Source of the DNA: Laetmonice hystrix
Lineage: Eukaryota
DNA: 64,000 bases
Reading direction: 5' to 3'
Assembly: GCA_965235115.1 (NCBI GenBank)
Contig: OZ249440.1
Coordinates: 19,654,001 to 19,718,000, forward strand
In this document: one piece after another, positions 7,931-60,786 of the stretch
Layout: each line of letters opens with the position of its first letter
Position numbering within the stretch: position 1 is the stretch's first letter
Position numbers and translations under genes: made by a program
The notes under the pieces: generated by a model
Seen by the model: only the letters and a program-made list of their open reading frames with translations
Databases searched by the model: none
Told to the model about the DNA's origin: nothing

Positions 7931-10900
7931 TATTTTATCTAATTGAGAGGACTACTTTGTGAAATATTTCTTTTATTTTTGCATACACCCGAAAGTAGGC
8001 GTATACATACGCAGAGCTCTAAGCCCATGACCATGCAGAATGAATAATGTTTTACCAGTTGTGACCGGAGAGATATTTGACCACTCAACATCTGTCTGTG
8101 AATGATGATGACGTAGGCAGGCGGGCAGCAGCACTGACGTGACCCCTAGCGGGCTGTTCACGGATTACATGCGGCGCTGCTTCCTGCCCTCATCACTGAA
8201 CAGCTGAGCAGCCGACTGGAATGGCGACCGATTGTAAATTGGGTTTAAGTAGAGCTTGAAAGAGGTAGGTTGTGCTCAGAATCATATTAAATCTCTACAC
8301 AGTGGCATTTAGTCGGGCAGAACCTACTTGGTTGCTTTACTCTAGCGGAAGATTGCCGCGCCTCAGCTAGATATTCGGTATGCAACAGACTATTTGTTTA
8401 ACAATCCGATAAACGGTGTATCTCTAGTCAATCGGACAGAGTTCTCTATGGTCAGTTGATATTGATATCATTGTTCTAAGAGTCACAGATCTGTTGGACA
8501 CACTATACCTGACAGTCCATTTGAATAGTAAGTATAAAAGTGTATTTCTAGTCCAATTGTTTGTTGATCAAAATCTGGTGACTATATTAGGAGTCAGAAA
8601 AAGGGCTGAAGGCTATAAGGTACGGACATTTGAAAAGTGAGACTAGGCAGAGTCGATTTGTGTCATCAGACTGGATGAGATTTTACAGAAGCAGTTTCAT
8701 GACGTTTTAGTTTTGGGGCCAGATAATACCCGGCCCTTAAATATCATGAGCTTACTCTCCCTCCACGTTTCTATGAAAGTTCAATCTACAAAGCGGGGAT
8801 TTTTCAAATGGTGTACGTAATATATGCTGATTTAGAAGAAGACCATCTGAAGTTGTGGGATCCTGTAGCAGGATCACGTAATCGTTCCTTCCTTCCAGAA
8901 TGATGGCATGATAATTAGATTAGTTTTTATAGTCCACTTCTTCGTTGTTCTTTGATAAAAATGAAGGTATTTAAACTTTATCTGACCTCTGGCCTCTCAA
9001 AATGTTAAAAGAGTAGTTTTGAGCATATCGTTGAATGGTGCTTGACAATCAACATTCAAACGTAGCTATAATTTAAACGGATTTTCAAACGGCAGGCTCA
9101 ATTACGACTGGAAAGGGCGAGTTTTACGAACCATCGACGTTTATCGATTCTCAGACAGTGTCAGGCTAAACATGATTGAGTTGAAGCCGGTTAACTTTAA
9201 TCGCATTGGTTGAAATTGACTCCGAGCTAATTTTGTGCAAGTTGATTTTGTCTCTGAATGGGAATTATTCTGATCTTCGCAAAATAAGCAAAGAAAAACG
9301 TTGTTCCGCCTGTGTTAAATAGATTATTTTAGATGTTTGCAAACTGTATTATTGGAGGACGCACTCCGGCATCAAACATAGACACCCACATAATATGTTA
9401 TACGAGCAGGGAGTGGGGGTATAGCATTTACTTAGGCATGTTTGGGACAATAACATACCTTTCAGCGCCTCTCTTCAGCTGTGATTTCCTTTATGCAGGC
9501 AGAACTCGGACACCTTATTGTTGTTGAATGGGTGACACATATTTATTCAATATTAAAACAAAAGGATGTAAATATTCAGAAAGTGAGCCCACGCTGCACT
9601 GACTGACAGTGATATACAAGATAAGATTGAAATGTGTCACCACCCAGGGTGAGCCCTCACTGCACCATCCGGGTTAAGAAGAATGTAAAAATTGAATATG
9701 ATTCAAACAGAAGAAGATATAAGTTATCTAAGGATAATATTGTGACGATAGTTTCTCCTGGACAGTGAGCCCACACTGCACTGCCTGGAAGGGTTGTTAT
9801 AAGTTTGAGGAGACTGGGTGTAATAATGAACAAAGTTGTTGTAAGTGGTATAGATTCTGAATTATGTGTCTGTCAAAAAGGGGTAGTAGGTGGCGACAGT
9901 GCCACGAAGAACCGGAATACGGTAGGAGGAAGATGGGGAGGCGGCGGGATTGAAAAATTCGTGGATGTCCGACTGAAGACGTAATGGCGACGATGAGACG
10001 CATGTGGAAGATGACCTTGACCTCAACTGTATATGACGTCACGTGTTCCCCTGGCGGAGGCAGGGGAAATTTGAGTTATCCGGAGAAGTAGCGCCCACTT
10101 GCGGCTTAGATGAGAATTACCGAGTTCTCCTGCATAAAACTCGTCGAGCCTGCGGCTGCAACGTTCCTTTATGCAGGCAGAACTCGGACACCTTATTGTT
10201 GTTGAATGGGTGACACATATTTATTCAATATTAAAACAAAAGGATGTAAATATTCAGAAAGTGAGCCCACGCTGCACTGACTGACAGTGATATACAAGAT
10301 AAGATTGAAATGTGTCACCACCCAGGGTGAGCCCTCACTGCACCATCCGGGTTAAGAAGAATGTAAAAATTGAATATGATTCAAACAGAAGAAGATATAA
10401 GTTATCTAAGGATAATATTGTGACGATAGTTTCTCCTGGACAGTGAGCCCACACTGCACTGCCTGGAAGGGTTGTTATAAGTTTGAGGAGACTGGGTGTA
10501 ATAATGAACAAAGTTGTTGTAAGTGGTATAGATTCTGAATTATGTGTCTGTCAAAAAGGGGTAGTAGGTGGCGACAGTGCCACCAACCTGCCAGTTGGCA
10601 GGTGGAGCCACCAAAAGAAAAAAGAACTGACGACTCAACAACAAAATGAGTCAAATTGACATCTTATCTGGGGTTAAGAGAACCCGAGCTGATCCACATG
10701 GAATGTCACACCAAATCCAAAGGTTGACGATTGAAGGTGCCGTATCCAGGTCTGGTTAAATGGGTTTAACTGTGAGGAGCGGGCTCCACGGGCAGTCTGT
10801 GTGTTAAAAGCCCCTGTACAACTCCAAACCATCGTCTCCCGATGACATGAAACATAAGAAGATCTGGTCAGTAAAGTATGAACTGTAAGTCATTCTCAAG

Positions 10901-11059
10901 GTGAGGTTGAAACTCCGATGTAGGAATTCGACGGAAGATACATTCAGATGAACTTTCCAACTACAGTCAAGGCACGCACACAAGCTAAAACCCACTCGCT
11001 ATATAAAGGAGAATAACGAAACGATGGCGAGAACCATCGGCGAGACGGGTAGTCACTGC

Positions 11060-11600
11060 CAACACTTGCTAAGTGAATGATAAATCGCACCCAAAGGTGC
11101 AACGTCCCAACCACACGGAGCAAGGCACGGCAGATAAATAAAGTACCACTCGCTAAGTAAAAGAAAATGGACCAAACATTGGCACAAATTCAATCACACG
11201 GGGCGAGACTGACGGTACAGTGCAACTTTGCTAAGTGAATGAGAAATCGCACCCAAAAGCGAACATCCCACCACAGGGGCAAAGCACGCACACCTAACAG
11301 TGCAACACTTGCTAAGTGAATGAGAAACCGCACCCAAAGGTGCAACGTCCCCACCACACGGTGCAAGGCACGCACACAGAATAACGTGCAACCTTGAATA
11401 AATGAATTTGAGGAAATATAAGTAATGGAATAATCACCACATGGGCAAAGCACGAACACCTAACAGCGGAACACGTGCTAAGTAAATGAGAAACAGCACC
11501 CAAAGGAGCAACGTCCCCACCACACGGTGCAAGGCACGTACACAGAATAACGTGCAACCTTGAATAAGTAAATCTGAGGAAATATAAGTAATGGAATAAT
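11060..11600. repeat. Four diverged modular repeats inside the split-repeat element
   Basis: TTGCTAAGTGAATGA.AAA.CGCACCCAAAGGTGCAACGTCCC.ACCACACGG.GCAAGGCACG-type modules near 11066, 11229, 11309 and 11477. Confidence 0.85.
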
Positions 11601-11799
11601 GACCATCATATACATCAACAGTACCTCAGATGGATCAAAATGTAAAAAAATGGGAAGGCAGGGGGACAATAACCTGTATCATGGCCCAGAATAATATTAG
11701 GTATACGTAATAATCGATTATTACGATAGAAATATAATTGTCCAAGAATTGAAATACCTGATGAGCCAAAATATAAAACTGTGGTTCCAGAAGAACAAT

Positions 11800-13215
11800 A
11801 CGTACCATGATGTCCAATAATAGAGAAGTAAAGATATAAGAAAACCAATAATAATGACACAATCCCGTGATCCAATCACTAAAGCAGTAGTCTTAATGAG
11901 ATGATTCAACATAAAAAAAACCTGTGAACCCATCAGGACTATAATATATTATGATGGGTAAATATAGATAAGTAAATATATTACAATAATAATAATAACG
12001 ACAGAATATCACTTGTCCAACCACTGTACCAGTGGACCAATAACCTATAACCTAACCAATAACCTATCATGATGTCCCAGTATAGGGAAGTAAAGATAGG
12101 AGAATAATAATAATAATGGCACGGATCCATTGATCCAACCAAAACCCATCAGGACCATAACACATTATAATGGGTAAATATAGAAAAGTAATATATTATA
12201 ATAATCAATAATCATGATAGAAATATGACTTGTCCACCCCGTACCAGTGAACCAGTACTATAAGATGGATAAACTATAAAACTGTGTTTCAATGAACAAT
12301 ACCATATCATGATGTCCCAGTATACGAAAGTAAAGCTATAAGAAGATAATAAAAATGGCACGGATCCATTGATCCAACCAAAACATCAGGACCATAACAC
12401 ATTATGGCACGGATCCATTGATCCAACCAAAACACCAGGACTATAACACATTATGGCACGGATCCATTGATCCAACCAAAACACCAGGACTATAACACAT
12501 TATGGCACGGATCCATTGATCCAACCAAAACACCAGGACTATAACACATTATGGCACGGATCCATTGATCCAACCAAAACATCAGGACTATAACACATTA
12601 TGGCACGGATCCATTGATCCAACCAAAACATCAGGACTATAACACATTATGGCACGGATCCATTGATCCAACCAAAACATCAGGACTATAACACATTATG
12701 GCACGGATCCATTGATCCAACCAAAACCCATCAGGCCCATAACACATTATAATGGGTAACTATAGAAAAGTAAATATATTATAATACTCAATAATCATGA
12801 TAGAAATATAACTTCTCCACCCAGTACCAGTGAACCAGTACTATAAGATGGATAAAATATAAAACTGTGTTTCAAGGAACAATAACATATCATGATGTCC
12901 CAGTATAGGAAAGTAAAGATAAGAAAATAATAATAATGACACGGATCCATTGATCCAACCACTAAACCAGTCTCTCATGTGATGACATGATTCCGCATAG
13001 AAAACTGGGAACCGATCAGGACCATAACACATTATGATGGGTAAATATAGAAAAGTAAATATATTATTATACTAATCAATAATAACGATAGAGATATCAC
13101 TTGTCCAAGGAGTACCAGTGAACCATTACCATAAGATGAGTCAAAATATAAAAAGAAAAGTAAAGATATAAGAATAATAATAACGGCACGGCTCCATTGA
13201 TCCAACCACTAAACC
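11800..13215. repeat. A-rich modules of about 240-290 bp inside the split-repeat element
   Basis: CATGATGTCC...GTAAAGAT...AATAAT..CACGGATCCATTGATCCAACC...CAGGACCATAACACATTA...GGGTAAATATAG modules near 11807, 12068, 12308 and 12891, partial at about 13150. Confidence 0.85.
12355..12750. repeat. 49-bp minisatellite, 8 copies
   Basis: ATGGCACGGATCCATTGATCCAACCAAAACA(T/C)CAGGACTATAACACATT at 12355, 12404, 12453, 12502, 12551, 12600, 12649 and 12698. Confidence 0.97.
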
Positions 13216-15833
13216 AGTCCCTCAGGTGAGACAAAATATAGTCAGATTAAAAGTGTAACCCGATCGTATCCTAACAACTTATAATGGTTACAAACGTAAA
13301 TATATAAATAATAATTATAAATTCAACTGATCCAACCATTAAAGATCAGTCAGTACAGATGAGTTATGAAAAACTGTGAAATCAACAGTACAATAATATA
13401 TTTAATGATATCCAGGGAAGAAGAAAAATTTGAGTAAAATACCCAGGCCAAATTATAAGAATCAATAATACGAATACTGGCCCGGGCACTTGACCGGTAC
13501 ATCAGGTCAGTCGAAAAACCCGTGAAAGAAGGTCGAGTTGTCCGCTAGACAACCTATATAATATAGAATCATGGTTGTCTGCAGGAATTTCTGGTTGACC
13601 CGCACTGTACCAATGCCTGGAACATCCTTTTGCTCTTCTTCTTCTTCTTCCTACGCTCCTGTTCCTGGTTTGTTTGTGTGGAATTGGGACTACCCAGTGA
13701 ACAGGAGACGATTATGTCACCTATCATCCACTCGTAGAGAGTCGAACAATCAGGCGGTCGGCCTGCTGTTCCAGAGCCAAATTTGAGGTTATCAAATGGA
13801 CAACCGTGCCATAAAGGCAGGGTTGTAACTTGTACGACTTCGCTTTATCTTGTCTCGTACAACCGTACAACCACTTACTTGAATGGTAAAAGGTATTAAA
13901 TATATTATAATAAACAGAATAATGTATGAATCCACCGGTCCCAGACCGAACCAGGGCAATCAAATTAAGTAGAAGAAATGAAAACCACTAAACAACAAGA
14001 TTAGATAATATATTATCTGGGGATATAAAGAATAATAATACTCCATGGTGATGATAAAATTTGACTGGTCCTAGACCGAACCATTAGATAAAACAGGGCA
14101 AAGCTACATTAATGAGGAGTTAATAAAGATGAATGCCAGAGCTGAACATTTATTTACACTGGACAGACTGAGGGAACTAAGGTAGATGATCATGATATAT
14201 TGTGACTGTAATATAACGTATAATTATAACGTCTAGAAGGAGATACCGAATTAAATAATATAGTATGGTATAGTAAGTAGATGTATACCGGTACCATAAT
14301 GATATTATACTAGTATAAGGAGGGATTCAAGCCCCTGTACCTGTGGTTAAACGAAAGAATGGTAGGGCTAGAATGGAATCATTGTAAATATTAATATAAC
14401 AGAGAGACCGACGTTGGAGAACGTACTACTTGGATCAGATTATATATCCTATATTATATTAAGGTATAATATAATGTAACTATGACATTTCAAATAAGCG
14501 GCAGGCTAACGTGACTAGGGCTACTACAGCTCCTATAACTAAGTTATAGGTACCAGTACTGCAGTACTACAGAGTGAAAAGTAGTTTTATTAGAGTCAAT
14601 TGAAAACTAACGTTAGGCCTAACACTGTAGATAGAGTGTTGTAACACTAACGTCGTTAGTTAGGCTACGTTATAATATAAGGTTAGGCTATCGTGAATCA
14701 ATAATTATAGCCTAAATTAGGTCACAAGCAACCTAATGATGCCGAATTTAACAGTAGGGCTAGGCCTTTTAATGAGACCCTATCCTACTTAACTTATCGT
14801 CGACAAGACATCTTCCCCTTGAGGCTTGACATGCGGGCGACTCCCAGTCGGGACGCAGACGCGCACGTGTCCAAATTGAAGGACGACGGGCTGCCCTACA
14901 AAACTCTTGAGACGGAATAGGCTACAGGCCCGGCCTGGGTCGTCAAGCGGGGGGAATGGGATCCCGATCGTCACGAAACCATGGTATCAAACGGCAAAAG
15001 AACACGTCCAGCAAAACCAGTGATAAACGTCCCATGACGTAGCCAACACGACAAGGAAGGCGCAAGGCAGAATCAACGCTGCATGCCAAATTGAAAAATT
15101 GGTGGATGTCCGACTGAAGACGTAATGGCGACGATGAGACGCATGTGGAAGATGACCTTGACCTCAACTGTATATGACGTCACGTGTTCCCCTGGCGGAG
15201 GCAGGGGAAATTTGAGTTATCCGGAGAAGTAGCGCCCACTTGCGGCTTAGATGAGAATTACCGAGTTCTCCTGCATAAAACTCGTCGAGCCTGCGGCTGC
15301 AACGTTCCTTTGCGACGTCCCAGTCGCCTGTTTTGGTCGGAACTCTAAGCGTGCCCAATAGTTAGGCCTATCAGATAGATCGCTGTATGTCAGTAGTTTT
15401 TCATTCTGTAACTGATCGGTAAATATTGATAACCCATCCACAGAACCCTAGCCCTGTCTCATTGATGGCTTCCCCCAGACAGGCCTATCTCCTGTCCTCC
15501 TACCTTAGCCCGGACCTCCCAAGACGGACGCTAACTGAATTAGAACGAGGAAGCCAGTGAATCGGCCCCAATTGGGAGGCGCCACCTACCGTTAACACGG
15601 GGAATTGAATTTCGCACTAATCCGATGAAACGATGATTGGATGATGAAAAAAAACGCGCCACGTCGGTCCATGAAATGACAAGTGCCCCGCCCTGATTCC
15701 ATCCCCCTTTTTATCAGTATTATTCTATTTGAAGGCGAGGAGGTCGAGGTGCACAGTAGAAAGGTATCATCAGTGACGTTTGGCCCTTGTCTGCTTGGAA
15801 TGATGAATCAATATTATGTCTTACAACATACAA

Positions 15834-16497
15834 TGTATAATATAAAACTACAACTTATTGATGATTCTGAACCATTGTATACTATAAAACTACAACTTAT
15901 TGATGGTTCTGAACCATTGTATACTATAAAACTACAACTTATTGATGATTCTGAACCATTGTATACTATAAAACTACAACTTATTGATGATTCTGAACCA
16001 TTGTATACTATAAAACTACAACTTATTGATGATTCTGAACCATTGTATACTATAAAACTACAACTTATTGATGGTTCTGAACCATTGTATACTATAAAAC
16101 TACAACTTATTGATGGTTCTGAACCATTGTATACTATAAAACTACAACTTATTGATGATTCTGAACCATTGTATACTATAAAACTACAACTTATTGATGA
16201 TTCTGAACCATTGTATACTATAAAACTACAACTTATTGATGGTTCTGAACCATTGTATACTATAAAACTACAACTTATTGATGGTTCTGAACCATTGTAT
16301 ACTATAAAACTACAACTTGATGGTTCTGAACCATTGTATACTATAAAACAACAACTTGATGGTTCTGAACCATTGTATACTATAAAACAACAACTTATTG
16401 ATGATTCTGAACCATTGTATACCATAAAACTACAACTTATTGATGATTCTGAACCATTGTATACTATAAAACAACAACTTATTGATGGTTCTGAACC
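15834..16497. repeat. 42-bp minisatellite, about 16 copies (two are 39 bp)
   Basis: Unit TATACTATAAAACTACAACTTATTGATG(A/G)TTCTGAACCATTG; explains ORFs 15683-16630 and 15814-16425. Confidence 0.97.
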
Positions 16498-18998: not shown

Positions 18999-19231
18999 NN
19001 NNNNNNNNNNNNNNNNNNNNNNNNNNNNNNNNNNNNNNNNNNNNNNNNNNNNNNNNNNNNNNNNNNNNNNNNNNNNNNNNNNNNNNNNNNNNNNNNNNNN
19101 NNNNNNNNNNNNNNNNNNNNNNNNNNNNNNNNNNNNNNNNNNNNNNNNNNNNNNNNNNNNNNNNNNNNNNNNNNNNNNNNNNNNNNNNNNNNNNNNNNNN
19201 NNNNNNNNNNNNNNNNNNNNNNNNNNNNNNN
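18999..19231. other. Assembly gap (233 N)
   Basis: Run of N. Confidence 1.
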
Positions 19232-19990
19232 TCTCTCACTCCCTCACTCACTCACTCCCCCACTCACTCACTCCCCCCTCACTCACTCACTCACTCACTC
19301 CCCCTCACTCACTCACTCCCCCTCACTCACTCACTCACTCCCCCATTCACTCACTCACTCGCCCACTCACTCACTCACCCCCACTCACTCACTCACTCCC
19401 CCACTCTCTCACTCCCTCACTCCCCCTCACTTACTCCCCCCTTACTCACTCACTCACTCACTCACCCCCCACTCACTCACTCACTCACTCACTCACCCCC
19501 ACACACACTCATTCCCTCGTCCACCCCCACACACACTCATTCCCTCACCCACTCCCCCATTCACTCACTCACTCACTCAATCACTCCCCCACTCACTCAC
19601 TCAATCCCCCACTCACTCTCTCATCACTCAATCCCCCACCCACTCACTCACTCAATCCCCCACTCACTCACTCACCCACTCACCCACTCACTCGCCCACT
19701 CACTCACTCACTCACTCACTCACTCACTCACACATTCCCCCACACACTCCCCCACTCACTCACTCCCCTACTCACTCCCCCACTCACTCACTCAATCCCC
19801 CACTCACTCACTCACTCCCCCACCCACTCACTCACACTCACTCCCCCACTCACTCACGCACTCACTCACTCCCCCACTCACTTACTCAATCACTCCCCCA
19901 CTCACTCACTCAATCACTCCCCACTCACTCACACTCTCACTCCCCCACTCCCCCACTCACTCACTCACTCACTCACTCACTCACTCATTC
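19232..19990. repeat. Degenerate (CACT)n microsatellite
   Basis: About 760 bp of CACT/CCCC variants; source of the H/S/L/T/P ORFs. Confidence 0.98.
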
Positions 19991-21519
19991 ACGGGACTAA
20001 TACAAAGATGTTGTTATAATTAGCACAGTGATGTGTACCCTCAGAGTTCAGTATGAATTACCACCCCATCCAACGCTTACATCATGTTTCCTTCATACAT
20101 GACAGCAGTGTTAGACGATACTTTTTGAGGTGAAGGATCTTCGATTGAAAATATCAGGCGAAGAGCAACTTGTTACACGAGTCAGGGAAGGGGCCAGAGT
20201 TTCTCGTTAGCCTGCATCCAATTAAAACTACACTGTATTGAAACATGATGCCACACCGTCGATAAAGGAGGCCTTAACAGATGATGAGGACATTTAGATC
20301 AGGTGTCATCTGAGCATTATGCTACACTACACGGTGCCCGATTCATATTTTGCAGCCGGACAATCGGCCTATGCTTGTTTACATGTCTGGCGCCACAGTC
20401 TTTAGCTGAAGCCTGTGAGTAATATTCTATTTACGGTCGTTGACTGGAGACGTTAAATCCTCTCGATCAATGTGGTATATGATGAAGATTGCACGCTGCT
20501 ATTCATGACAGATCAATGAGACAGATGCTCAGGGTGAGCTGTCCATCGCTTCGATGGGCTACGTTTATATTTGAGACACATTTAATGGTATTAATGGATG
20601 AAATCTAAGATCAGACAGTCCGTTCCATTATATTCGATTAAAAAGTAAAAATGAAAATGGTAAAAAATGTAATTCTTCACCTTTGCTAAGGGTGCAGACA
20701 CCCAACCCTCACGCCAACAGGGGCCTTCCCCCTCCACCCCCGCCCGCCTGGTACAGTATAATCAGATGTGACATCTATGTTCCATGATCAGCGAGAGCCA
20801 TGTCATTGAAATGAATAATGATTTCTATGTTTAACCAGTTGTATTTAGTTGTATTACGCTAGTCTATCCCCATTTTCAGTTGTCGTAACAGAAAAACACC
20901 TTCTTTTCTCCCGATTCTAACTATTCGATGGCCCTTGAGCAGACACTTTTTGTCACAGAAGAATTGCAAAACATTCTGGGGGGTGGGGGGGGGGCGGAGT
21001 CCTCCATCCAATTAAACCTGCACAGCGTCTCGTCAAATCCTTGATCAAGGAACCCGCCAGCGTTTTGATCATTGACTTTGACAACTGACAAAGCCTACAC
21101 GGGTTAACATTTGGTATGATGTGCAACAAGACTTTGGTAAGAGGAAAAGATATAACGGATTATGTTCATCTGATAATCCGATGAGTCTCATTCCTACGGT
21201 ACTATAGGGGGTGGGAGAGGGAGTGTTCACACATTGCTAAACGCTGCCCCCGGACAAACCAGGAGAAAATCTGTCGTCGATGGAACGTGCAGCATACTGT
21301 CGATGCAGGTAAAATGCAGTTATAAGACATCGTTTCCCAGGATAGGATATTACAGGGGATTTAGTTTCCTTAAAACTCCTTGAAACATGCGTCTGGCAGC
21401 TTGAAGTATTCGGAATTTGCCATTTGATACTTACCCGTCGTAACAATGGAAGAGAGAGACTTGTGGAGTCGACAATCCCGGTACCACACGCCATTGTTAA
21501 GCCAGGAATCAATGTGTCG

Positions 21520-29373: not shown

Positions 29374-31250
29374 ATCCACAGGGAGGATAACGGACACGTA
29401 TACCACCCTATCCACAGGGAGGATAACGGGCACGTATACCTCCCTATCCACAGAGAGGATAACGGGCACGTACCTCCCTATCCACAGGGTGGATAACGGA
29501 CACGTACCTCCCTATCCACAGGGTGGATAACGGGCACGTACCTCCCTATCCACAGGGAGGATAACGTGCACGTACCTCCCTATCCACAGGGTGGATAACG
29601 GACACGTATACCACCCTATCCACAGGGAGGATAACGGGCACGTATACCTCCCTATCCACAGAGAGGATAACGGGCACGTACCTCCCTATCCACAGGGAGG
29701 ATAACGGACACGTACCTCCCTATCCACAGGGAGGATAACTGGCACGTACCTCCCTATCCACAGGGAGGATAACGTGCAGGTACCTCCCTATCCACAGGGA
29801 GGATAACGTGCACGTACCTCCCTATTCACAGGGAGGATAACGGGCACGTACCTCCCTATCCACAGAGAGGATAACGGGCACGTACCTCCCTATTCACAGG
29901 GAGGATAACGGGCACGTACCTCCCTATCCACAGGAAGGATAACGTGCACGTACCTCCCTATCCACAGGAAGGATAACGTGCACGTGCCTCCCTATCCACA
30001 GGGAGGATAACGGGCACGTACCTCCCTATCCACAGGGAGGATAACGGGCAGGTACCTCCCTATCCACGGGGTGGATAACGGGCACGTACCTCCCTATCCA
30101 CAGGTAGGATAACGTGCACGTACCTCCCTATCCACAGGGAGGATAACGGGCATGTACCTCCCTATCCACGGGGAGGATAACGTGCACGTACCTCCCTATC
30201 CACAGGGAGGATAACGGGCATGTACCTCCCTATCCACAGGGAGGATAACGTGCACGTACCTCCCTATCCACAGGGAGGATAACGTGCACGTACCTCCCTA
30301 TCCACAGGGAGGATAACGGGCACGTATACCTCCCTATCCACAGGGAGGATAACGGGCACGTACCTCCCTATCCACAGGGAGGATAACGGGCAGGTACCTC
30401 CCTATCCACGGGGTGGATCGGGCACGTATACCTCCCTATCCACGGGGAGGATAACGTGCACGTCCCTCCCTATCCACAGGGAGGATAACGGGCATGTACC
30501 TCCCTATCCACAGGGAGAATAACGTGCACATACCTCCCTATCCACAGGGAGGATAACGTGCACGTACCTCCCTATCCACAGGGAGGATAACGGGCACGTA
30601 TACCTCCCTATCCACAGGGAGGATAACGGGCACGTACCTCCCTATCCACAGGGAGGATAACGGGCAGGTACCTCCCTATCCACGGGGTGGATCGGGCACG
30701 TATACCTCCCTATCCACAGGGAGGATAACGGGCATGTACCTCCCTATCCACAGGGAGGATAAGGGACACGTACCTCCCTATCCACAGGGAGGATAACGGG
30801 CATGTACCTCCCTATCCACGGGGAGGATAACGTGCACGTACCCCCTATCCACAGGGAGGATAACGTGCACGTACCTCCCTATCCACAGGGAGGATAACGG
30901 GCATGTACCTCCCTATCCACAGGGAGGATAACGGGCATGTACCTCCCTATCCACAGGGAGGATAACGGACACGTACCTCCCTCTCCACATGGAGGATAAC
31001 GTGCACGTACCTCCCTATCCACAGGGAGGATAACGTGCACGTACCTCCCTATCTACGGGGAGGATAACGTGCACGTCCCTCCCTATCCACGGGGAGGATA
31101 ACGGGCACGTACCTCCCTATCCACAGGGAGGATAACGGGCATGTACCTCCCTATCCACGGGGAGGATAACGTGCACGTACCTCTCTATCCACAGGGAGGA
31201 TAACGGGCATGTACCTCCCTATCCACAGGGAGGATAACGGGCACGTACCT
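29374..31250. repeat. 34-bp minisatellite (36-bp variants), about 55 copies
   Basis: Consensus TACCTCCCTATCCACAGGGAGGATAACGGGCACG, with internal hairpin CCTCCCT-ATCCAC-AGGGAGG. Confidence 0.98.
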
Positions 31251-42756: not shown

Positions 42757-42939
42757 NNNNNNNNNNNNNNNNNNNNNNNNNNNNNNNNNNNNNNNNNNNN
42801 NNNNNNNNNNNNNNNNNNNNNNNNNNNNNNNNNNNNNNNNNNNNNNNNNNNNNNNNNNNNNNNNNNNNNNNNNNNNNNNNNNNNNNNNNNNNNNNNNNNN
42901 NNNNNNNNNNNNNNNNNNNNNNNNNNNNNNNNNNNNNNN
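42757..42939. other. Assembly gap (183 N)
   Basis: Run of N. Confidence 1.
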
Positions 42940-50335: not shown

Positions 50336-52135
50336 AACTCGGTATTAAGAAAGGAAAGTAGCTTGGTCGTATGTACAACAAGGTAACTTTCTGCCCTCCT
50401 CAAATCCACCATGACGTATCTGTGTGTAGAAGCAGGTATAGGACGATACGGCAGGAAGCTTTCATGCAGGTTGGAGGATGAGGAGAGAGACTGTCTGTAG
50501 ACTGATAGACGTTCTCTGATGTCAACTATGCTATATATCATGGTCGGCAGGCATTGTGCTCGTGTCGGCACCCATGTGTTCGTAGCAACCAGTCTAGTAC
50601 AAAGCGACAGATGCCTCTCTCCCGATGGCGTTTCCACTGCCTTTCGATCATCCTTACGGATACCAGTTTGGCCATCAAAGCAGCGGCTGATTACTTGATG
50701 ACAAGATAACCACCATCAGGACGATTAGCAGCAAGGATCGGTAACAAGAAGACACCCTAGAAGATGATCGATTTGCCTCGCCTGTCACCTTACTTAGTGT
50801 CAGTTTGCTTTCTTTCCTTCATTAGTTTGCGGTGTATTGGATCGAGGAACTCCCCGTATGTGCAGTAATGTACCTAAAGGTTAATATGCTACACTGTATT
50901 CATAGGGCTATAATTATAGTTTAGTGATACTTTTAATAAGGTCGCGCTGAGTTAAAGCAGCTTACCAATTTTCATTATTTCACTCGTGACTATTTCATGC
51001 AGAATTAATGTCCATGAACAGTTCCACCAAGTATGTTTCTGCTTCGTTGTCATCTGCTTCTTTGTCGTCGTCTTCCTGCATCGCCAAGTACGGAAATTAT
51101 TAGCAGTCTAAAATAGTTTGGCCAATGCTCTTTAGTAGAGGCTCTATTCATCGTTTATGTATGAGCCACCTTCGTCTGGTGTTAAATATTGATCTATGTT
51201 TAGGCCACATACCTGCGAAGATATTCCAGCAAGGGGGTGAATAATACATAGTCGAGCAACATGTCTACTGGACTGAACATATCGACAATCGCTCGTTATA
51301 ACGCCAGCATTGGAACCTGACCCGCATTGGCATAACGAGGAAGATGGAAGAACACTGTCACCTTGTTAACTGTTGCCTTTTCACCAATGACCAGTCCTGA
51401 GTACCAGTAATGTTGGACGGGTGAAAAATGGGGGGAAAGGGATAAAGAAGATGGAGGCTCCCGGGTTTTAAAATCAGGCCCTTCAGTTTACCCTAACCGT
51501 TCATTAGACTAGCGGTGTAACAAGGTGCGATTACATTGTTCTTAAGTCTGTATTGGAAAGATGGTTGGCGGTAAGCCAGGGTGGCGGTAAGCCAGGGTGG
51601 CGGTATCCTATGGTAAGGGACTTTGTCTCACGATCTGATGCCGGCAAGTGAAGGTGGCCTTCTTGGGGACGCTATAACGAGGGATGATAATAATGACCGT
51701 ATACTTAGCAACGGTTGAAGAAAAGATTATCATTGGGTTTCGACATGGCGGGCATCACGCACATAGTAAAACCTGTATATTTGAGCAGGTAGCAGGTTGA
51801 CACACCCTAATTAACGTCCAGACCTGGACCGCCCGCCCCCCTGCCAACATCACCGCGTGGCTATGAAAAATCCATTCAATGTACACCCATGTCTGGTTGA
51901 AATACGTCAGGGGCTAATATATTACACACATGGGTTAAACGGTTCAGGGAGCATTTATAATATTCCTGAATTATACTCTGCACCTGTGAACGTTCAACCT
52001 AGACTGTCTAGGTGGAAAATAGACAAGTCAACGCTAGTCAGTACTTCACGTCAGGAGCGAAGCACTGACTAGGGTTGACTTGTCTAACTAGGTAGAACAG
52101 GGAGGCTTGGGTGGAAGTTGGCTTTTGATCCAGCA

Positions 52136-52665
52136 CAGATAGACGGAGAGAGGTGCGATGGCTTGCCGCCGCCGTTAGGTGGTACAGATATACGGAGAGA
52201 GGTGCGATGGCTTGCCGCCGCCGTTAGGTGGTACAGATATACGGAGAGAGGTGCGATGGCTTGCCGCCGCCGTTAGGTGGTACAGATATACGGAGAGAGG
52301 TGCGATGGCTTGCCGCCGCCGTTAGGTGGTACAGATATACAGAGAGAGGTGCGATGGCTTGCCGCCGCCGTTAGGTGGTACAGATATACGGAGAGAGGTG
52401 CGATGGCTTGCCGCCGTTAGGTGGTACAGATATACGGAGAGAGGTGCGATGGCTTGCCGCCGTTAGGTGGTACAGATATACGGAGTGAGGTGCGATGGCT
52501 TGCCGCCGTTAGGTGGTACAGATATACGGAGTGAGGTGCGATGGCTTGCCGCCGCCGTTAGGTGGTACAGATATACAGAGAGAGGTGCGATGGCTTGCCG
52601 CCGCCGTTAGGTGGTACAGATATACGGAGAGAGGTGCGATGGCTTGCCGCCGCCGTAAGGTGGTA
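52136..52665. repeat. 49/46-bp minisatellite, 11 copies
   Basis: Unit CAGATATACGGAGAGAGGTGCGATGGCTTGCCGCC(GCC)GTTAGGTGGTA; three consecutive units lack one GCC. Confidence 0.97.
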
Positions 52666-59247: not shown

Positions 59248-60419
59248 TTAGTTCGTTACGGCGAAGAAGATCTATTCAACAAATTAGCACGCAGGTGTCT
59301 TCTTAGTGAACACGTTTATGGTCGTATTCAGAAATAAATTATAAAATTACCGCCCGCCACTTTCATCGTTCCAGGCCAGGGCTGATCCAGACCGATGAAG
59401 GCGGCGGTGGGTTATCCACTGCAGGAAACCATCACAAGTTTAGGAAACCTATTTTATGAGGCGGTCTGCCTCCATCCTAAGCGCCTCCTGCCGTATGCAC
59501 CTCCAAGGGCAGTGACCATCTTCTAGACAGCTTGGTTGTTACGAGTGACAAACTCATCAATAAAGCAATAATAGTTTCAGTATATCTCATCGAGGCATTC
59601 AAGGCTACGACTACAGCGTACATGGAAAAGTCAATTTAATGCACTCTAAAGCCTGACAATCTCATCACAGTGAGAAGGACAGCGTTGGAAGAAACTATTT
59701 GTAGGGACAAGTCCCGCCTACTCAGGGGACCTCCTGTCCGGAAAGATAATCTTCCTTCCACTTACTTTTGTGTAGGTGGCGCAACCTTAAACAATTGTTA
59801 CGTGCACTAGACCTCTCTCTCTTTCTCTGTCTCTCTGTCGGGGTGTGTGTATGTGTGTGTGTCTCGCTCTGTTTCTGAGCATAAAGAACGCATATCACAG
59901 GTGCAATTCGAGATGGATATAGAGTTTAGGATAGCAAATGTAATTTGGAAAGGGTCTGTGACTTTGATAAAAGGCTGCTGTTTCCAGACTTGGAGACTGA
60001 CGGATTTATAGACGAGGTATTGATGCAATTTACAGCCCGCCGTATTAACGTTTCTTCAGGCGAACCAATAGTTAATATTAAGTACATGCGATTAAGATTA
60101 ACTTCTGCTTTTTGTACGTTAATGGTCTGAACACTGACGTCTGCAGTAATATTGTCGCCTTATGTCATTCAGACTGGAAGGATTAAAGATTAACTTCAGA
60201 CGATTAGCGCACATAATTTTGTTGACGCTGAACTTGTAAAAAGAGACCGGGTACGCGTTCATTATACCGCTTGGCCATGCTGAAACTCGCTTTTTCTACA
60301 AGTACACAGAAACGTGAAATCAACATTAATGATTAAATGTTTAAAGAACTCGTATCCCGGCAGAATCTCAGAAATCTAACAAGTCAGTCCGGGTTGAGGC
60401 ATGGGTTTGGGCATGGGTT

Positions 60420-60786
60420 TGTGTACCTCAGCTTTTCACACCCAGCATGTTGTGTACCTCAGCTTCTCACACCCAGCATGTTGTGTACCTCAGCTTCTCA
60501 CACCCAGCATGTTGTGTACCTCAGCTTCTCACACCCAGCATGTTGTGTACCTCAGCTTCTCACACCCAGCATGTTGTGTACCTCAGCTTCTCACACCCAG
60601 CATGCTGTGTACCTCAGCTTCTCACACCCAGCATGTTGTGTACCTCAGCTTCTCACACCCAGCATGTTGTGTACCTCAGCTTCTCACACCCAGCATGTTG
60701 TGTACCTCAGCTTCTCACACCCAGCATGTTGTGTACCTCAGCTTCTCACACCCAGCATGTTGTGTACCTCAGCTTCTCACACCCAG
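60420..60786. repeat. 31-bp minisatellite, about 12 copies
   Basis: Unit TGTGTACCTCAGCTTCTCACACCCAGCATGT; explains ORFs 60337-61063. Confidence 0.97.

What the first reader, a model, noticed from the sequence alone, without database searches (positions are those of the whole stretch)
9486..15311. Young, ORF-less element with Ngaro/PAT split direct repeats
Seen: on the minus strand, A1 (15311-15090), a 4,506-bp interior, B1 (10583-10164), A2 (10170-9949), a 43-bp spacer and B2 (9905-9486). B copies are identical over 420 bp and A copies differ at one base in 222. AATAAA lies about 55 nt before the end of B2. Established: A1-ORFs-B1-A2-B2 is the layout of Ngaro/PAT tyrosine-recombinase retrotransposons, which integrate a circular intermediate without an ordinary TSD. 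Inference: a recently mobilised non-autonomous derivative that kept all cis signals but replaced gag/RT-RH/YR with repetitive DNA. I know few descriptions of such large split-repeat passengers, but novelty is unverified.
Basis: partly seen in the sequence, partly recalled or inferred. Interest (0 to 1): 0.9.

Follow-up and report, generated by a model that had tools for sequence, protein, structure and literature searches.

The report
Young non-coding Ngaro-type retrotransposon copy
This is a very recently inserted, protein-less copy of a tyrosine-recombinase (Ngaro-type) jumping element that must borrow its enzymes from intact relatives found elsewhere in the same genome; the kind is already known, so it is a well-documented example and not a new class.

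Summary
On the minus strand the window holds A1, a 4,506-bp interior, B1/A2, a 43-bp spacer and B2. The B copies match 420/420 and the A copies 221/222.

It is a mobile element, not a local duplication.
- The same layout recurs in 19 paired copies on 12 chromosomes, with different flanks and no open frame over 190 aa.
- Contigs from the sample's reads hold the predicted empty site, GTGAT-TTCCTTT-GCGACG.

The core shared across the family is only AAA. It occurs once at the B1/A2 junction and once at each end, as expected for a tyrosine-recombinase crossover without target duplication.

I found two intact coding relatives with the same layout. Each has an SGNH hydrolase ORF, a gag-like ORF, RT/RNase H and a Cre-like recombinase, and no methyltransferase, which makes them Ngaro-type.
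- The chromosome C29 element is about 80% identical to this family in A and B, and its junction is almost the same.
- The C20 element matches a second non-coding family of about 30 copies.

All four share a 28-pair junction hairpin with compensatory changes.

Novelty is modest, because non-coding relatives of this order are known (TOC1, SIRE) and the scan already noted one in this genome.

The parts
15090..15311 (-). A1, the 5' terminal repeat (222 bp). It starts AAAGGAACG. It holds the right arm and inner stem of the junction palindrome, and a block conserved with the C29 coding element (ACGTGACGTC / ATACAG / GGTCAAGGTC) that is a candidate promoter.
   Evidence: 221/222 identical to A2. The same repeat starts 19 paired copies. 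About 80% identical to A of L024.
10584..15089 (-). Non-coding interior (4,506 bp). No frame exceeds 100 aa and no remnant of gag, RT or recombinase is detectable.
   Evidence: ORF lists. tblastn with the eight proteins of the coding relatives finds nothing in family 1.
11060..11605 (-). Tandem array with an 84/166-bp unit inside the interior. It is homologous to a short repeat region that lies between the hydrolase and gag-like ORFs of the C29 coding element.
   Evidence: TRF. Window 11069-11376 matches L024 (reverse-complement coordinates 1664-1905) at 75-78%.
12355..12750 (-). Tandem array of eight 49-bp units. It sits within a larger zone of dispersed 143/290/583-bp repeats (11795-13230).
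   Evidence: Length differences between copies (5.5-7.0 kb) lie in the interior.
13531..13880 (-). Interior segment that resembles an unrelated dispersed repeat of the genome. It is probably captured DNA.
   Evidence: Own-genome search gives 66-78% matches at about a dozen loci that are not copies of this family.
10164..10583 (-). B1, the internal copy of the 3' repeat (420 bp). It contains AATAAA at 10220-10225 and three copies of a GTGCAG(C/T)GTGGGCTCAC motif.
   Evidence: 420/420 identical to B2. The motifs and the AATAAA/ATTAAA signal are conserved in four families.
10121..10186 (-). Junction palindrome spanning the B1/A2 boundary. It is a 28-pair hairpin with the crossover AAA (10168-10170) inside the stem.
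   Evidence: Folds as single-stranded DNA at -23.8 kcal/mol, z = -6.2, with 0 of 200 shuffles as good. Conserved in 7 sequences of 4 families with 2 compensatory pairs. The arms CCTGCATAAA...TTTATGCAGG, 29 nt apart, occur at 57 loci and never in the control.
9949..10170 (-). A2, the internal copy of the 5' repeat. It overlaps B1 by AAA (7 nt in this copy).
9906..9948 (-). 43-bp spacer between A2 and B2. It is C/T-rich on the element strand (CCCGCCGCCTCCCCATCTTCCTCC...).
   Evidence: A pyrimidine tract of 39-43 bp at the same place is conserved in all four families.
9486..9905 (-). B2, the 3' terminal repeat. AATAAA lies at 9542-9547, 56 nt before the end. By family consensus the element ends at ...CATAAA (window 9490), and 9486-9489 belong equally to the target.
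   Evidence: The empty-allele joint 9485->15305 has 7 ambiguous letters.

Best explanation
Window 9486-15311 (minus strand) is a recently inserted copy of a non-autonomous retrotransposon. It belongs to the Ngaro-type lineage of tyrosine-recombinase (DIRS-order) elements with split direct repeats. It still segregates with an empty allele.

It keeps the cis parts: A, B, the junction palindrome, the pyrimidine spacer and the poly(A) signal. It has lost every gene, and repeats fill the interior.

Likely cycle:
1. RNA polymerase II starts in A1, reads through B1/A2, and ends after the AATAAA of B2. The RNA therefore lacks the outer ends (inferred).
2. A coding Ngaro element supplies gag-like protein, RT/RNase H, tyrosine recombinase and SGNH hydrolase in trans. 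The best candidate in this assembly is the single intact copy on C29, whose junction differs at 2 of 46 bases (inferred).
3. The cDNA ends are rebuilt from the complete internal B1/A2 copy and closed into a circle that carries a B-AAA-A junction (inferred, by analogy with the ICR of DIRS-1).
4. The recombinase exchanges strands between the AAA of that junction and an AAA in the target. The element then ends in AAA on both sides with no target duplication. The sequence pattern, the empty site and the repeated use of one target show this outcome. The enzyme step itself is inferred.
For: Layout and identities.

Mobility:
- There are 19 paired copies on 12 chromosomes with unrelated flanks.
- A1/A2 and B1/B2 are 100% identical in most copies.
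- An empty allele at single-copy depth (35-51) occurs in three runs of one sample.

No genes.

Crossover:
- A single AAA sits at the junction and at each end in 15 of 15 copies. Two copies read TAA or CAA at the left end, as expected if the overlap is partly inherited from the target.
- There is no flanking duplication.
- Three independent hits fall at the same position of a diverged host repeat. Flanks are 84-92% identical and the elements 99.1%.

Coding relatives with the same A1-ORFs-B1A2-spacer-B2 layout and 100% identical repeats:
- L024 (C29) and L023 (C20).
- Their ORFs hit RVT_1 (E 1e-13), RNase H and GDSL/SGNH hydrolase (over Pfam cut-off in L024).
- The recombinase ORF matches Cre/Tre in the PDB with the GHSxRxGAA...W...YIR motif.
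- No Dam methyltransferase is found, although it is found in a DIRS1-like control.
- The L024 terminal block is 80-81.5% identical to this family over 1,165 bp.

Literature:
- SDR definition: PMC8969392, PMC9210276.
- Terminal trinucleotide present once at the circle junction: PMC3266345, PMC7192593.
Against: - There is no RNA evidence. No RNA run holds the element, so the transcript ends and even transcription itself are inferred.
- No circle or cDNA was observed.
- The C29 element is only about 80% identical in A and B. A closer helper may exist or may be missing from the assembly. Its RT has no close second copy (next best 59-62%).
- A circle closed end to end would carry two identical B-AAA-A junctions, yet every paired copy examined (16 loci) shows the same permutation. 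The simple model does not explain this.
- The empty-allele joint rests on contigs of one sample, with only 30 letters on its shorter side.
Confidence: 0.85

Rival explanations
1. The element moves only as DNA. A tyrosine recombinase excises it, or its A-interior-B part, as a circle by recombining the identical junctions, and re-inserts it at AAA sites like a Crypton, without reverse transcription.
For: Directly repeated junction sites are ideal substrates for recombinase resolution. Solo A-43bp-B units exist (L017, L018) and are the expected product left behind by such an excision. The genome holds at least 94 Pfam tyrosine-recombinase matches, some in elements without a detectable RT (L019).
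Against: - Relatives with the same termini all carry RT/RNase H.
- A poly(A) signal is conserved at a fixed distance from the end in four families. This makes sense only for an RNA stage.
- The copy number, 19 plus about 30, indicates replicative spread.
- An excised A-interior-B circle would re-insert without A2-spacer-B2. Yet every paired copy examined (16 loci) carries the whole set.
- Solo units are equally explained by homologous recombination between A1 and A2.
Confidence: 0.07
2. It is a non-coding derivative of an ordinary LTR retrotransposon (LARD/TRIM-like) with a nested solo LTR that happens to split the repeats.
For: It has long direct repeats, a non-coding interior of several kb, a pyrimidine/purine tract next to a repeat, and tandem repeats in the interior, as in many LARDs.
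Against: - The outer boundaries fall exactly at the internal B/A junction in every copy.
- There is no 4-6 bp target duplication and no TG...CA ends.
- The coding relatives have a Cre-like tyrosine recombinase and no DDE integrase domain.
Confidence: 0.02
3. It is a local segmental duplication or an assembly artefact of a repeat-rich region.
For: The surrounding window is full of minisatellites and has three N runs.
Against: The identical architecture occurs on 12 chromosomes with unrelated flanks. Read contigs cover the whole element, and a separate contig carries the precise empty site.
Confidence: 0.01

Closest known systems
Ngaro retrotransposons (Goodwin & Poulter 2004, cited from my own knowledge; described in PMC9210276, PMC4157794, PMC7192593)
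   Same: [quoted passage not shown]
- Relatives encode RT/RNase H and a tyrosine recombinase, with no methyltransferase.
- An extra SGNH/GDSL hydrolase ORF, as reported for some Ngaro elements.
- No target duplication.
   Different: The window element has no ORF at all. In the coding relatives found here the hydrolase ORF lies at the 5' end, before the gag-like ORF. PMC9210276 describes it after the recombinase in Xenopus. RT phylogeny against named Ngaro elements was not done.
TOC1 of Chlamydomonas reinhardtii (Day et al. 1988). [quoted passage not shown] Structural details are from my own memory.
   Same: A multi-copy element of about 5.7 kb without coding capacity. It has an unusual split arrangement of terminal repeats and is mobilised by a coding relative of the DIRS order (TOC3).
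   Different: It is from a green alga and belongs to the PAT-like lineage, whose coding partner has a methyltransferase. There is no sequence relationship. I could not read the original paper.
SIRE, the short non-autonomous derivative of VIPER in Trypanosoma cruzi (PMC6681497)
   Same: SIRE corresponds to A2 plus about 30 bp plus B2 of VIPER. The solo A-43bp-B units of this family (L017, L018) have that same composition.
   Different: The window copy is the full-length form with a 4.5-kb interior, not the short form. VIPER is a separate lineage found in kinetoplastids.
DIRS-1 and DIRS1-like elements (PMC3266345, PMC7192593)
   Same: A terminal trinucleotide present once at the circle junction. 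An internal copy of both ends (ICR there, B1/A2 here) that can restore a sub-genomic transcript. Proteins that, by a section heading in PMC7192593, act in trans.
   Different: DIRS1-like elements have inverted terminal repeats plus an ICR and a Dam-like methyltransferase. Such an element exists in this genome (L022) and shares no sequence with A or B.
LARD/TRIM non-autonomous LTR retrotransposons of plants (own knowledge)
   Same: The concept is the same: the repeats and cis signals are kept, the coding interior is replaced by non-coding DNA, and the element is mobilised in trans.
   Different: Those use a DDE integrase and make 5-bp target duplications. This element uses a recombinase-type crossover at AAA.

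Membership tests
Ngaro-type tyrosine-recombinase retrotransposon (DIRS order) | Split direct repeats in the order A1-internal-B1-A2-B2, with A1=A2 and B1=B2 | tested here: met
   The layout is the same in 19 paired copies and in both coding relatives.
Ngaro-type tyrosine-recombinase retrotransposon (DIRS order) | Encodes RT/RNase H and a tyrosine recombinase | tested here: not met
   The window element has no ORF and no remnant, so it is a non-autonomous derivative and not a complete member. Relatives L024 and L023, which have homologous termini, do encode them.
Ngaro-type tyrosine-recombinase retrotransposon (DIRS order) | No methyltransferase domain (this separates Ngaro from DIRS1-like and PAT-like) | tested here: met
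   The RT ORFs of L024 and L023 end about 30 aa after RNase H and give no Dam hit at E<=1 or E<=0.01. The DIRS1-like control L022 gives Dam PF05869 at E 2e-5.
Ngaro-type tyrosine-recombinase retrotransposon (DIRS order) | Optional SGNH hydrolase ORF, reported for some Ngaro elements | tested here: met
   Lipase_GDSL_2 scores 36.8 bits (cut-off 32.9) in L024 and 32.6 bits, E 1.4e-7, in L023, just under the cut-off. Its position is 5' of the gag-like ORF.
Ngaro-type tyrosine-recombinase retrotransposon (DIRS order) | RT and recombinase cluster with named Ngaro elements in a phylogeny | not tested
The Atlas look-up gives only eukaryotic phage-integrase-like clusters.
Ngaro-type tyrosine-recombinase retrotransposon (DIRS order) | Integration without target duplication, with a short sequence shared between the circle junction and the target | tested here: met
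   AAA lies at both ends and once at the junction in 15 of 15 copies, with no duplication. The empty allele holds the shared heptamer once.
Non-autonomous retrotransposon mobilised in trans | Multi-copy, young, lacks genes, shares cis termini with a coding element in the same genome | tested here: met
   Actual trans-mobilisation cannot be tested with these tools.
PAT-like / DIRS1-like | Methyltransferase domain; for DIRS1-like, inverted terminal repeats plus an ICR | tested here: not met
   No inverted repeats in the element and no MT in the coding relatives.
LTR retrotransposon derivative (LARD/TRIM) | Complete LTRs at both ends, a 4-6 bp target duplication, and a DDE integrase in the autonomous partner | tested here: not met

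The most novel reading that the evidence does not exclude
The conserved 28-pair palindrome across the B/A junction may be the working substrate of the cycle, not an accident of sequence.

In a full-length single strand, the 3' end of B2 (...CCTGCATAAA) can pair with TTTATGCAGG inside A1, while A1's own first 30 nt fold back. This rebuilds the junction hairpin with a nick exactly at the AAA crossover and a 3-nt redundant flap. Ends would then be joined, or strands exchanged, on folded single-stranded nucleic acid. That resembles integron attC sites or CTX phage, and differs from a classical duplex core site.

The G-T/G-U wobble pairs kept in all families would point to the sense strand. If true, this would give split-repeat recombinase retrotransposons a concrete circularisation and integration mechanism, fitting the single-stranded linear cDNA reported for DIRS-1 (PMC7192593).
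Probability: 0.2. Interest if true: 0.65.

Novelty: new member of a known kind. Interest (0 to 1): 0.4.

Why it matters
On its own this is an ordinary, though unusually clean, example of a parasitic derivative of a recombinase retrotransposon. Its value is as a natural experiment.

- Two non-coding families, of 19 and about 30 full copies, outnumber their closest coding relatives, which are each single-copy in this assembly.
- Insertions are so recent that at least one is still heterozygous, or absent from part of the reads.
- Only a few blocks survive between four otherwise diverged families: the junction hairpin, the pyrimidine spacer, the start of B, a GTGCAG...GGGCTCAC motif, and the poly(A) signal.

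Those blocks form a short list of candidate cis signals for a transposition mechanism that has been tested experimentally only for DIRS-1. For annotation of this genome, the result also explains a class of 5-7 kb 'unknown' repeats and their 685-bp solo forms.

Tried and rejected
- **Rfam on the element (E<=1):** no match, so no ribozyme or tRNA-like part.
- **Pfam Phage_integrase scan of the genome:** 94 matches, none within 30 kb of any family junction. The recombinase of the true relatives is too weak for that model (E 0.036), which explains the miss.
- **L019 (C1), a 1,442-aa recombinase ORF element, and L022 (C30), DIRS1-like:** fetched as possible helpers, but neither has nucleotide similarity to A or B.
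- **L020 (C1), A1-A2 spacing 8.85 kb:** suspected to be autonomous. It is an older non-coding copy with an extra 3.5-kb ORF-less insert.
- **Degenerate 35-mer and arm-gap-arm patterns:** these found no further large family, but they exposed the C20 and C29 variants.
- **tblastn of the eight relatives' proteins:** no remnant in family 1. Family 2 keeps small hydrolase and RNase H remnants.
- **RNA evidence:** no RNA run holds the element.
- **Limits met:** The 1988 TOC1 paper is not held. Search of the scan's notes by sequence was blank.
- **Target preference beyond AAA:** extra matches to the junction (GG, GGA, GGAA) occur in 7 of 17 sites, but three of these are the same repeat site. I do not claim significance.
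- **Not attempted:** no complex or structure prediction was run, because no binding claim is made.
Full report
**1. Observation**

On the minus strand the order is:
- A1, 15311-15090
- a 4,506-bp interior, 15089-10584
- B1, 10583-10164
- A2, 10170-9949
- a 43-bp spacer, 9948-9906
- B2, 9905-9486

The B copies are identical at 420 of 420 positions. The A copies differ at one position in 222; A1 carries a substitution at that position that none of the 14 other sequenced copies has. AATAAA lies 56 nt before the end of B. The interior has no open frame above 100 aa. It is rich in tandem arrays: an 84/166-bp unit at 11060-11605 and a 49-bp unit at 12355-12750. Rfam finds nothing.

**2. It is a dispersed, young family**

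The window is C5:19654001-19718000 of a 627-Mb assembly. Searching that assembly with A, with B and with terminal patterns gives 19 loci on 12 chromosomes where two A copies lie 1.7-8.9 kb apart on one strand. The loci I fetched have B1/A2 fused and a 43-bp spacer before B2. There are about twenty further partial or solo copies.

The fifteen copies I extracted are 2.4-7.0 kb long. All are ORF-less and their flanks are unrelated. In most of them A1=A2 and B1=B2 at 100%. The window copy is 99.7-100% identical to seven others over the 1.13-kb 3' block.

**3. Ends and target**

Aligning the ends shows that the element strand always starts AAAGGAACG (twice TAA or CAA) and always ends GCCTGCATAAA. 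The internal junction reads GCCTGCAT-AAA-GGAACG. The family-wide overlap is therefore AAA. There is no flanking duplication.

Three loci (L002, L004, and the solo L017) have the element at the same position of a host repeat. Their flanks are only 84-92% identical while the elements are 99.1% identical. These are independent hits on one preferred site (...CCGT-AAA-GGTT...).

**4. Empty allele**

I laid the contigs of four runs of one sample on window 9400-15399. In three runs one contig joins 9485 directly to 15305, with seven letters that fit either side. Its depth is 35-51, the same as the unique flanks, against hundreds to thousands inside the element.

It carries a linked G>C change at 9435.

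Caveats:
- The contigs come from one sample.
- The shorter side of the joint is 30 letters.
- Contigs show presence, not allele frequency.

**5. Coding relatives**

The junction motif GCCTGCATAAAGG(A/C)ACGTTG occurs 54 times with one mismatch or none. This revealed a second non-coding family:
- Its example is L021: A 229 bp, B 567 bp, a 42-bp spacer, and 210-bp tandem repeats.
- It has about 30 paired copies.

A pattern of the two palindrome arms with a free gap found 57 loci and one odd variant on C20. Fetching that locus (L023) gave an 8.2-kb element with:
- A1=A2 and B1=B2 at 100%, and a 43-bp spacer
- ORFs of 211, 354, 627 and 330 aa

An own-genome search with its RT then pointed to C29:14.36 Mb, inside a pair of family-1-like A repeats. 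That locus (L024) is a 6.8-kb element with:
- A 215 bp (100% between copies) and B 430 bp (99.5%), and a 39-bp spacer
- ORFs of 220, 380, 620 and 327 aa

Pfam and PDB results for the ORFs:
- GDSL/SGNH hydrolase for the first ORF
- nothing for the second, which is gag-like by position only
- RVT_1 plus RNase H for the third
- weak integrase SAM-like and catalytic hits for the fourth

The fourth ORF matches Cre/Tre in the PDB at E 2e-4 to 2e-3, with GHSFRIGAA...GRW...YIR aligned to the Cre His-Arg-Trp-Tyr region. Its Atlas neighbours are eukaryotic phage-integrase clusters.

No Dam-like methyltransferase is present. A DIRS1-like element of the same genome, used as a positive control, shows one (L022). 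By the published criteria (PMC4157794, PMC9210276, PMC7192593) these are Ngaro-type elements.

The two elements are 46-61% identical in protein, and each is single-copy in this assembly.

**6. Link to the window family**

- L024 matches family 1 at 80-81.5% over the whole B1-A2-spacer-B2 block, plus about 28 nt upstream.
- It matches at about 80% over A1.
- It matches at 75-78% between its inter-ORF repeat and the 84-bp array of the window interior.
- The 46 nt after the AAA differ at two positions.

L023 is the closer relative of family 2, at 84-88%, and shares its 210-bp array. Family 2 still holds remnants of the hydrolase N-terminus and of RNase H. Family 1 holds none.

**7. Conserved cis blocks**

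An alignment of the four families shows conservation concentrated in five places:
- the first 50 nt of A
- the end of A plus a C/T-rich spacer
- the first 10 nt of B (CGTCGCCAC)
- a GTGCAG(C/T)GTGGGCTCAC motif
- AATAAA/ATTAAA, followed by GGTGT..CCCA..AACAACA and the junction

The junction region folds into a 28-pair hairpin:
- As single-stranded DNA: -23.8 kcal/mol, z = -6.2.
- RNAalifold on seven sequences keeps it, with two pairs changed on both sides (C-G to U-A, G-C to A-U) and several G-U pairs.
- The crossover AAA lies inside the stem, 16 nt from the centre of symmetry. The arms are therefore too far apart to form a classical duplex core site.

**8. Mechanism**

- **Shown:** the layout, the copy number, the youth of the copies, the AAA rule, the empty site, the repeated use of one target, the coding relatives, and the conserved hairpin.
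- **Inferred, from the literature on DIRS-order elements (PMC7192593, PMC3266345):** transcription from A1 to the poly(A) site of B2; reverse transcription by enzymes supplied in trans; restoration of the missing ends from the internal B1/A2 copy; closure into a circle; and recombinase crossover at AAA.
- **Unexplained:** a circle closed end to end would have two equal junctions, yet only one permutation is seen.

**9. Comparison and novelty**

- Non-coding derivatives of recombinase retrotransposons are known. TOC1 of Chlamydomonas is described as a non-autonomous DIRS element (PMC9940879).
- SIRE of Trypanosoma cruzi equals A2 plus about 30 bp plus B2 of VIPER (PMC6681497). The solo A-43bp-B units seen here have the same composition.
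- The scan's own notes list an ORF-less split-repeat element elsewhere in this genome whose helper was not identified (s1-323315), and they describe Ngaro-rich introns (s1-330527).

I rate it a new member of a known kind, of moderate interest.

Noticed in passing
L017:6001-6687 (G000:C7:31110144-31110830) and L018:6001-6685 (G000:C29:6942489-6943173): Solo units made of A, the 43-bp spacer and B only (about 685 bp), bounded by AAA on both sides. They have the same composition as SIRE of VIPER. They are probably products of A1xA2 recombination or of recombinase resolution.
   Followed up: partly
L002, L004, L017 (G000 C10:14.68 Mb, C6:7.21 Mb, C7:31.11 Mb): Three insertions lie at the same position of three diverged copies of an older host repeat. 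Flanks are 84-92% identical and the elements 99.1%. This points to a preferred target (...CCGT-AAA-GGTT...).
   Followed up: partly
L021:1601-8969 (G000:C1:25576200-25583568) and about 30 further loci: A second ORF-less split-repeat family (A 229 bp, B 567 bp, 42-bp spacer, 210-bp tandem array). It has the same junction motif and small remnants of hydrolase and RNase H coding sequence.
   Followed up: partly
L024 (G000:C29:14359300-14366800, minus) and L023 (G000:C20:9373200-9383100, minus): In both intact Ngaro-type elements the SGNH/GDSL hydrolase ORF is the first ORF, upstream of the gag-like ORF. In L023 a 1.3-kb tandem array separates them. PMC9210276 places this ORF after the recombinase in Xenopus.
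   Followed up: partly
G000:C29:5876824-5885506: Three family-2-like junctions lie exactly 4,322 bp apart on one strand. This suggests a head-to-tail tandem array of a shortened element.
   Followed up: no
G000:C5:36673264-36711727: Seven tyrosine-recombinase fragments (129-aa frames) are spaced mostly 6,238 bp apart (twice 6,672 bp). This is a tandem array of a recombinase-bearing unit on the window's own chromosome.
   Followed up: no
L019 (G000:C1:56912485-56920450): A unit of about 7 kb with a single 1,442-aa ORF. Its only Pfam match is a C-terminal phage-integrase domain (no RT), and it has 108-nt inverted repeats. At least five intact copies of 1,115-1,451 aa are present in the genome. 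It may be a Crypton-like DNA element.
   Followed up: partly
window 13531-13880: Part of the element's interior matches about a dozen unrelated loci at 66-78%. This looks like DNA captured from another dispersed repeat.
   Followed up: no
window 15834-16497, 19235-19992, 29374-31250, 52135-52665, 60419-60786: The window is rich in minisatellites: 42 bp x16 just 520 bp from A1; (CTCA)n next to an N run, which causes the strong GC skew at 18-20 kb; 34 bp x55; 49 bp x11; and 31 bp x12. N runs lie at 2256-2490, 18999-19231 and 42757-42939.
   Followed up: no
window 9435 and 15346/15350: Single-base differences occur in the flanking contigs of the reads (G>C at 9435 on the empty-site contig). They may be markers to phase the filled and empty alleles.
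   Followed up: no
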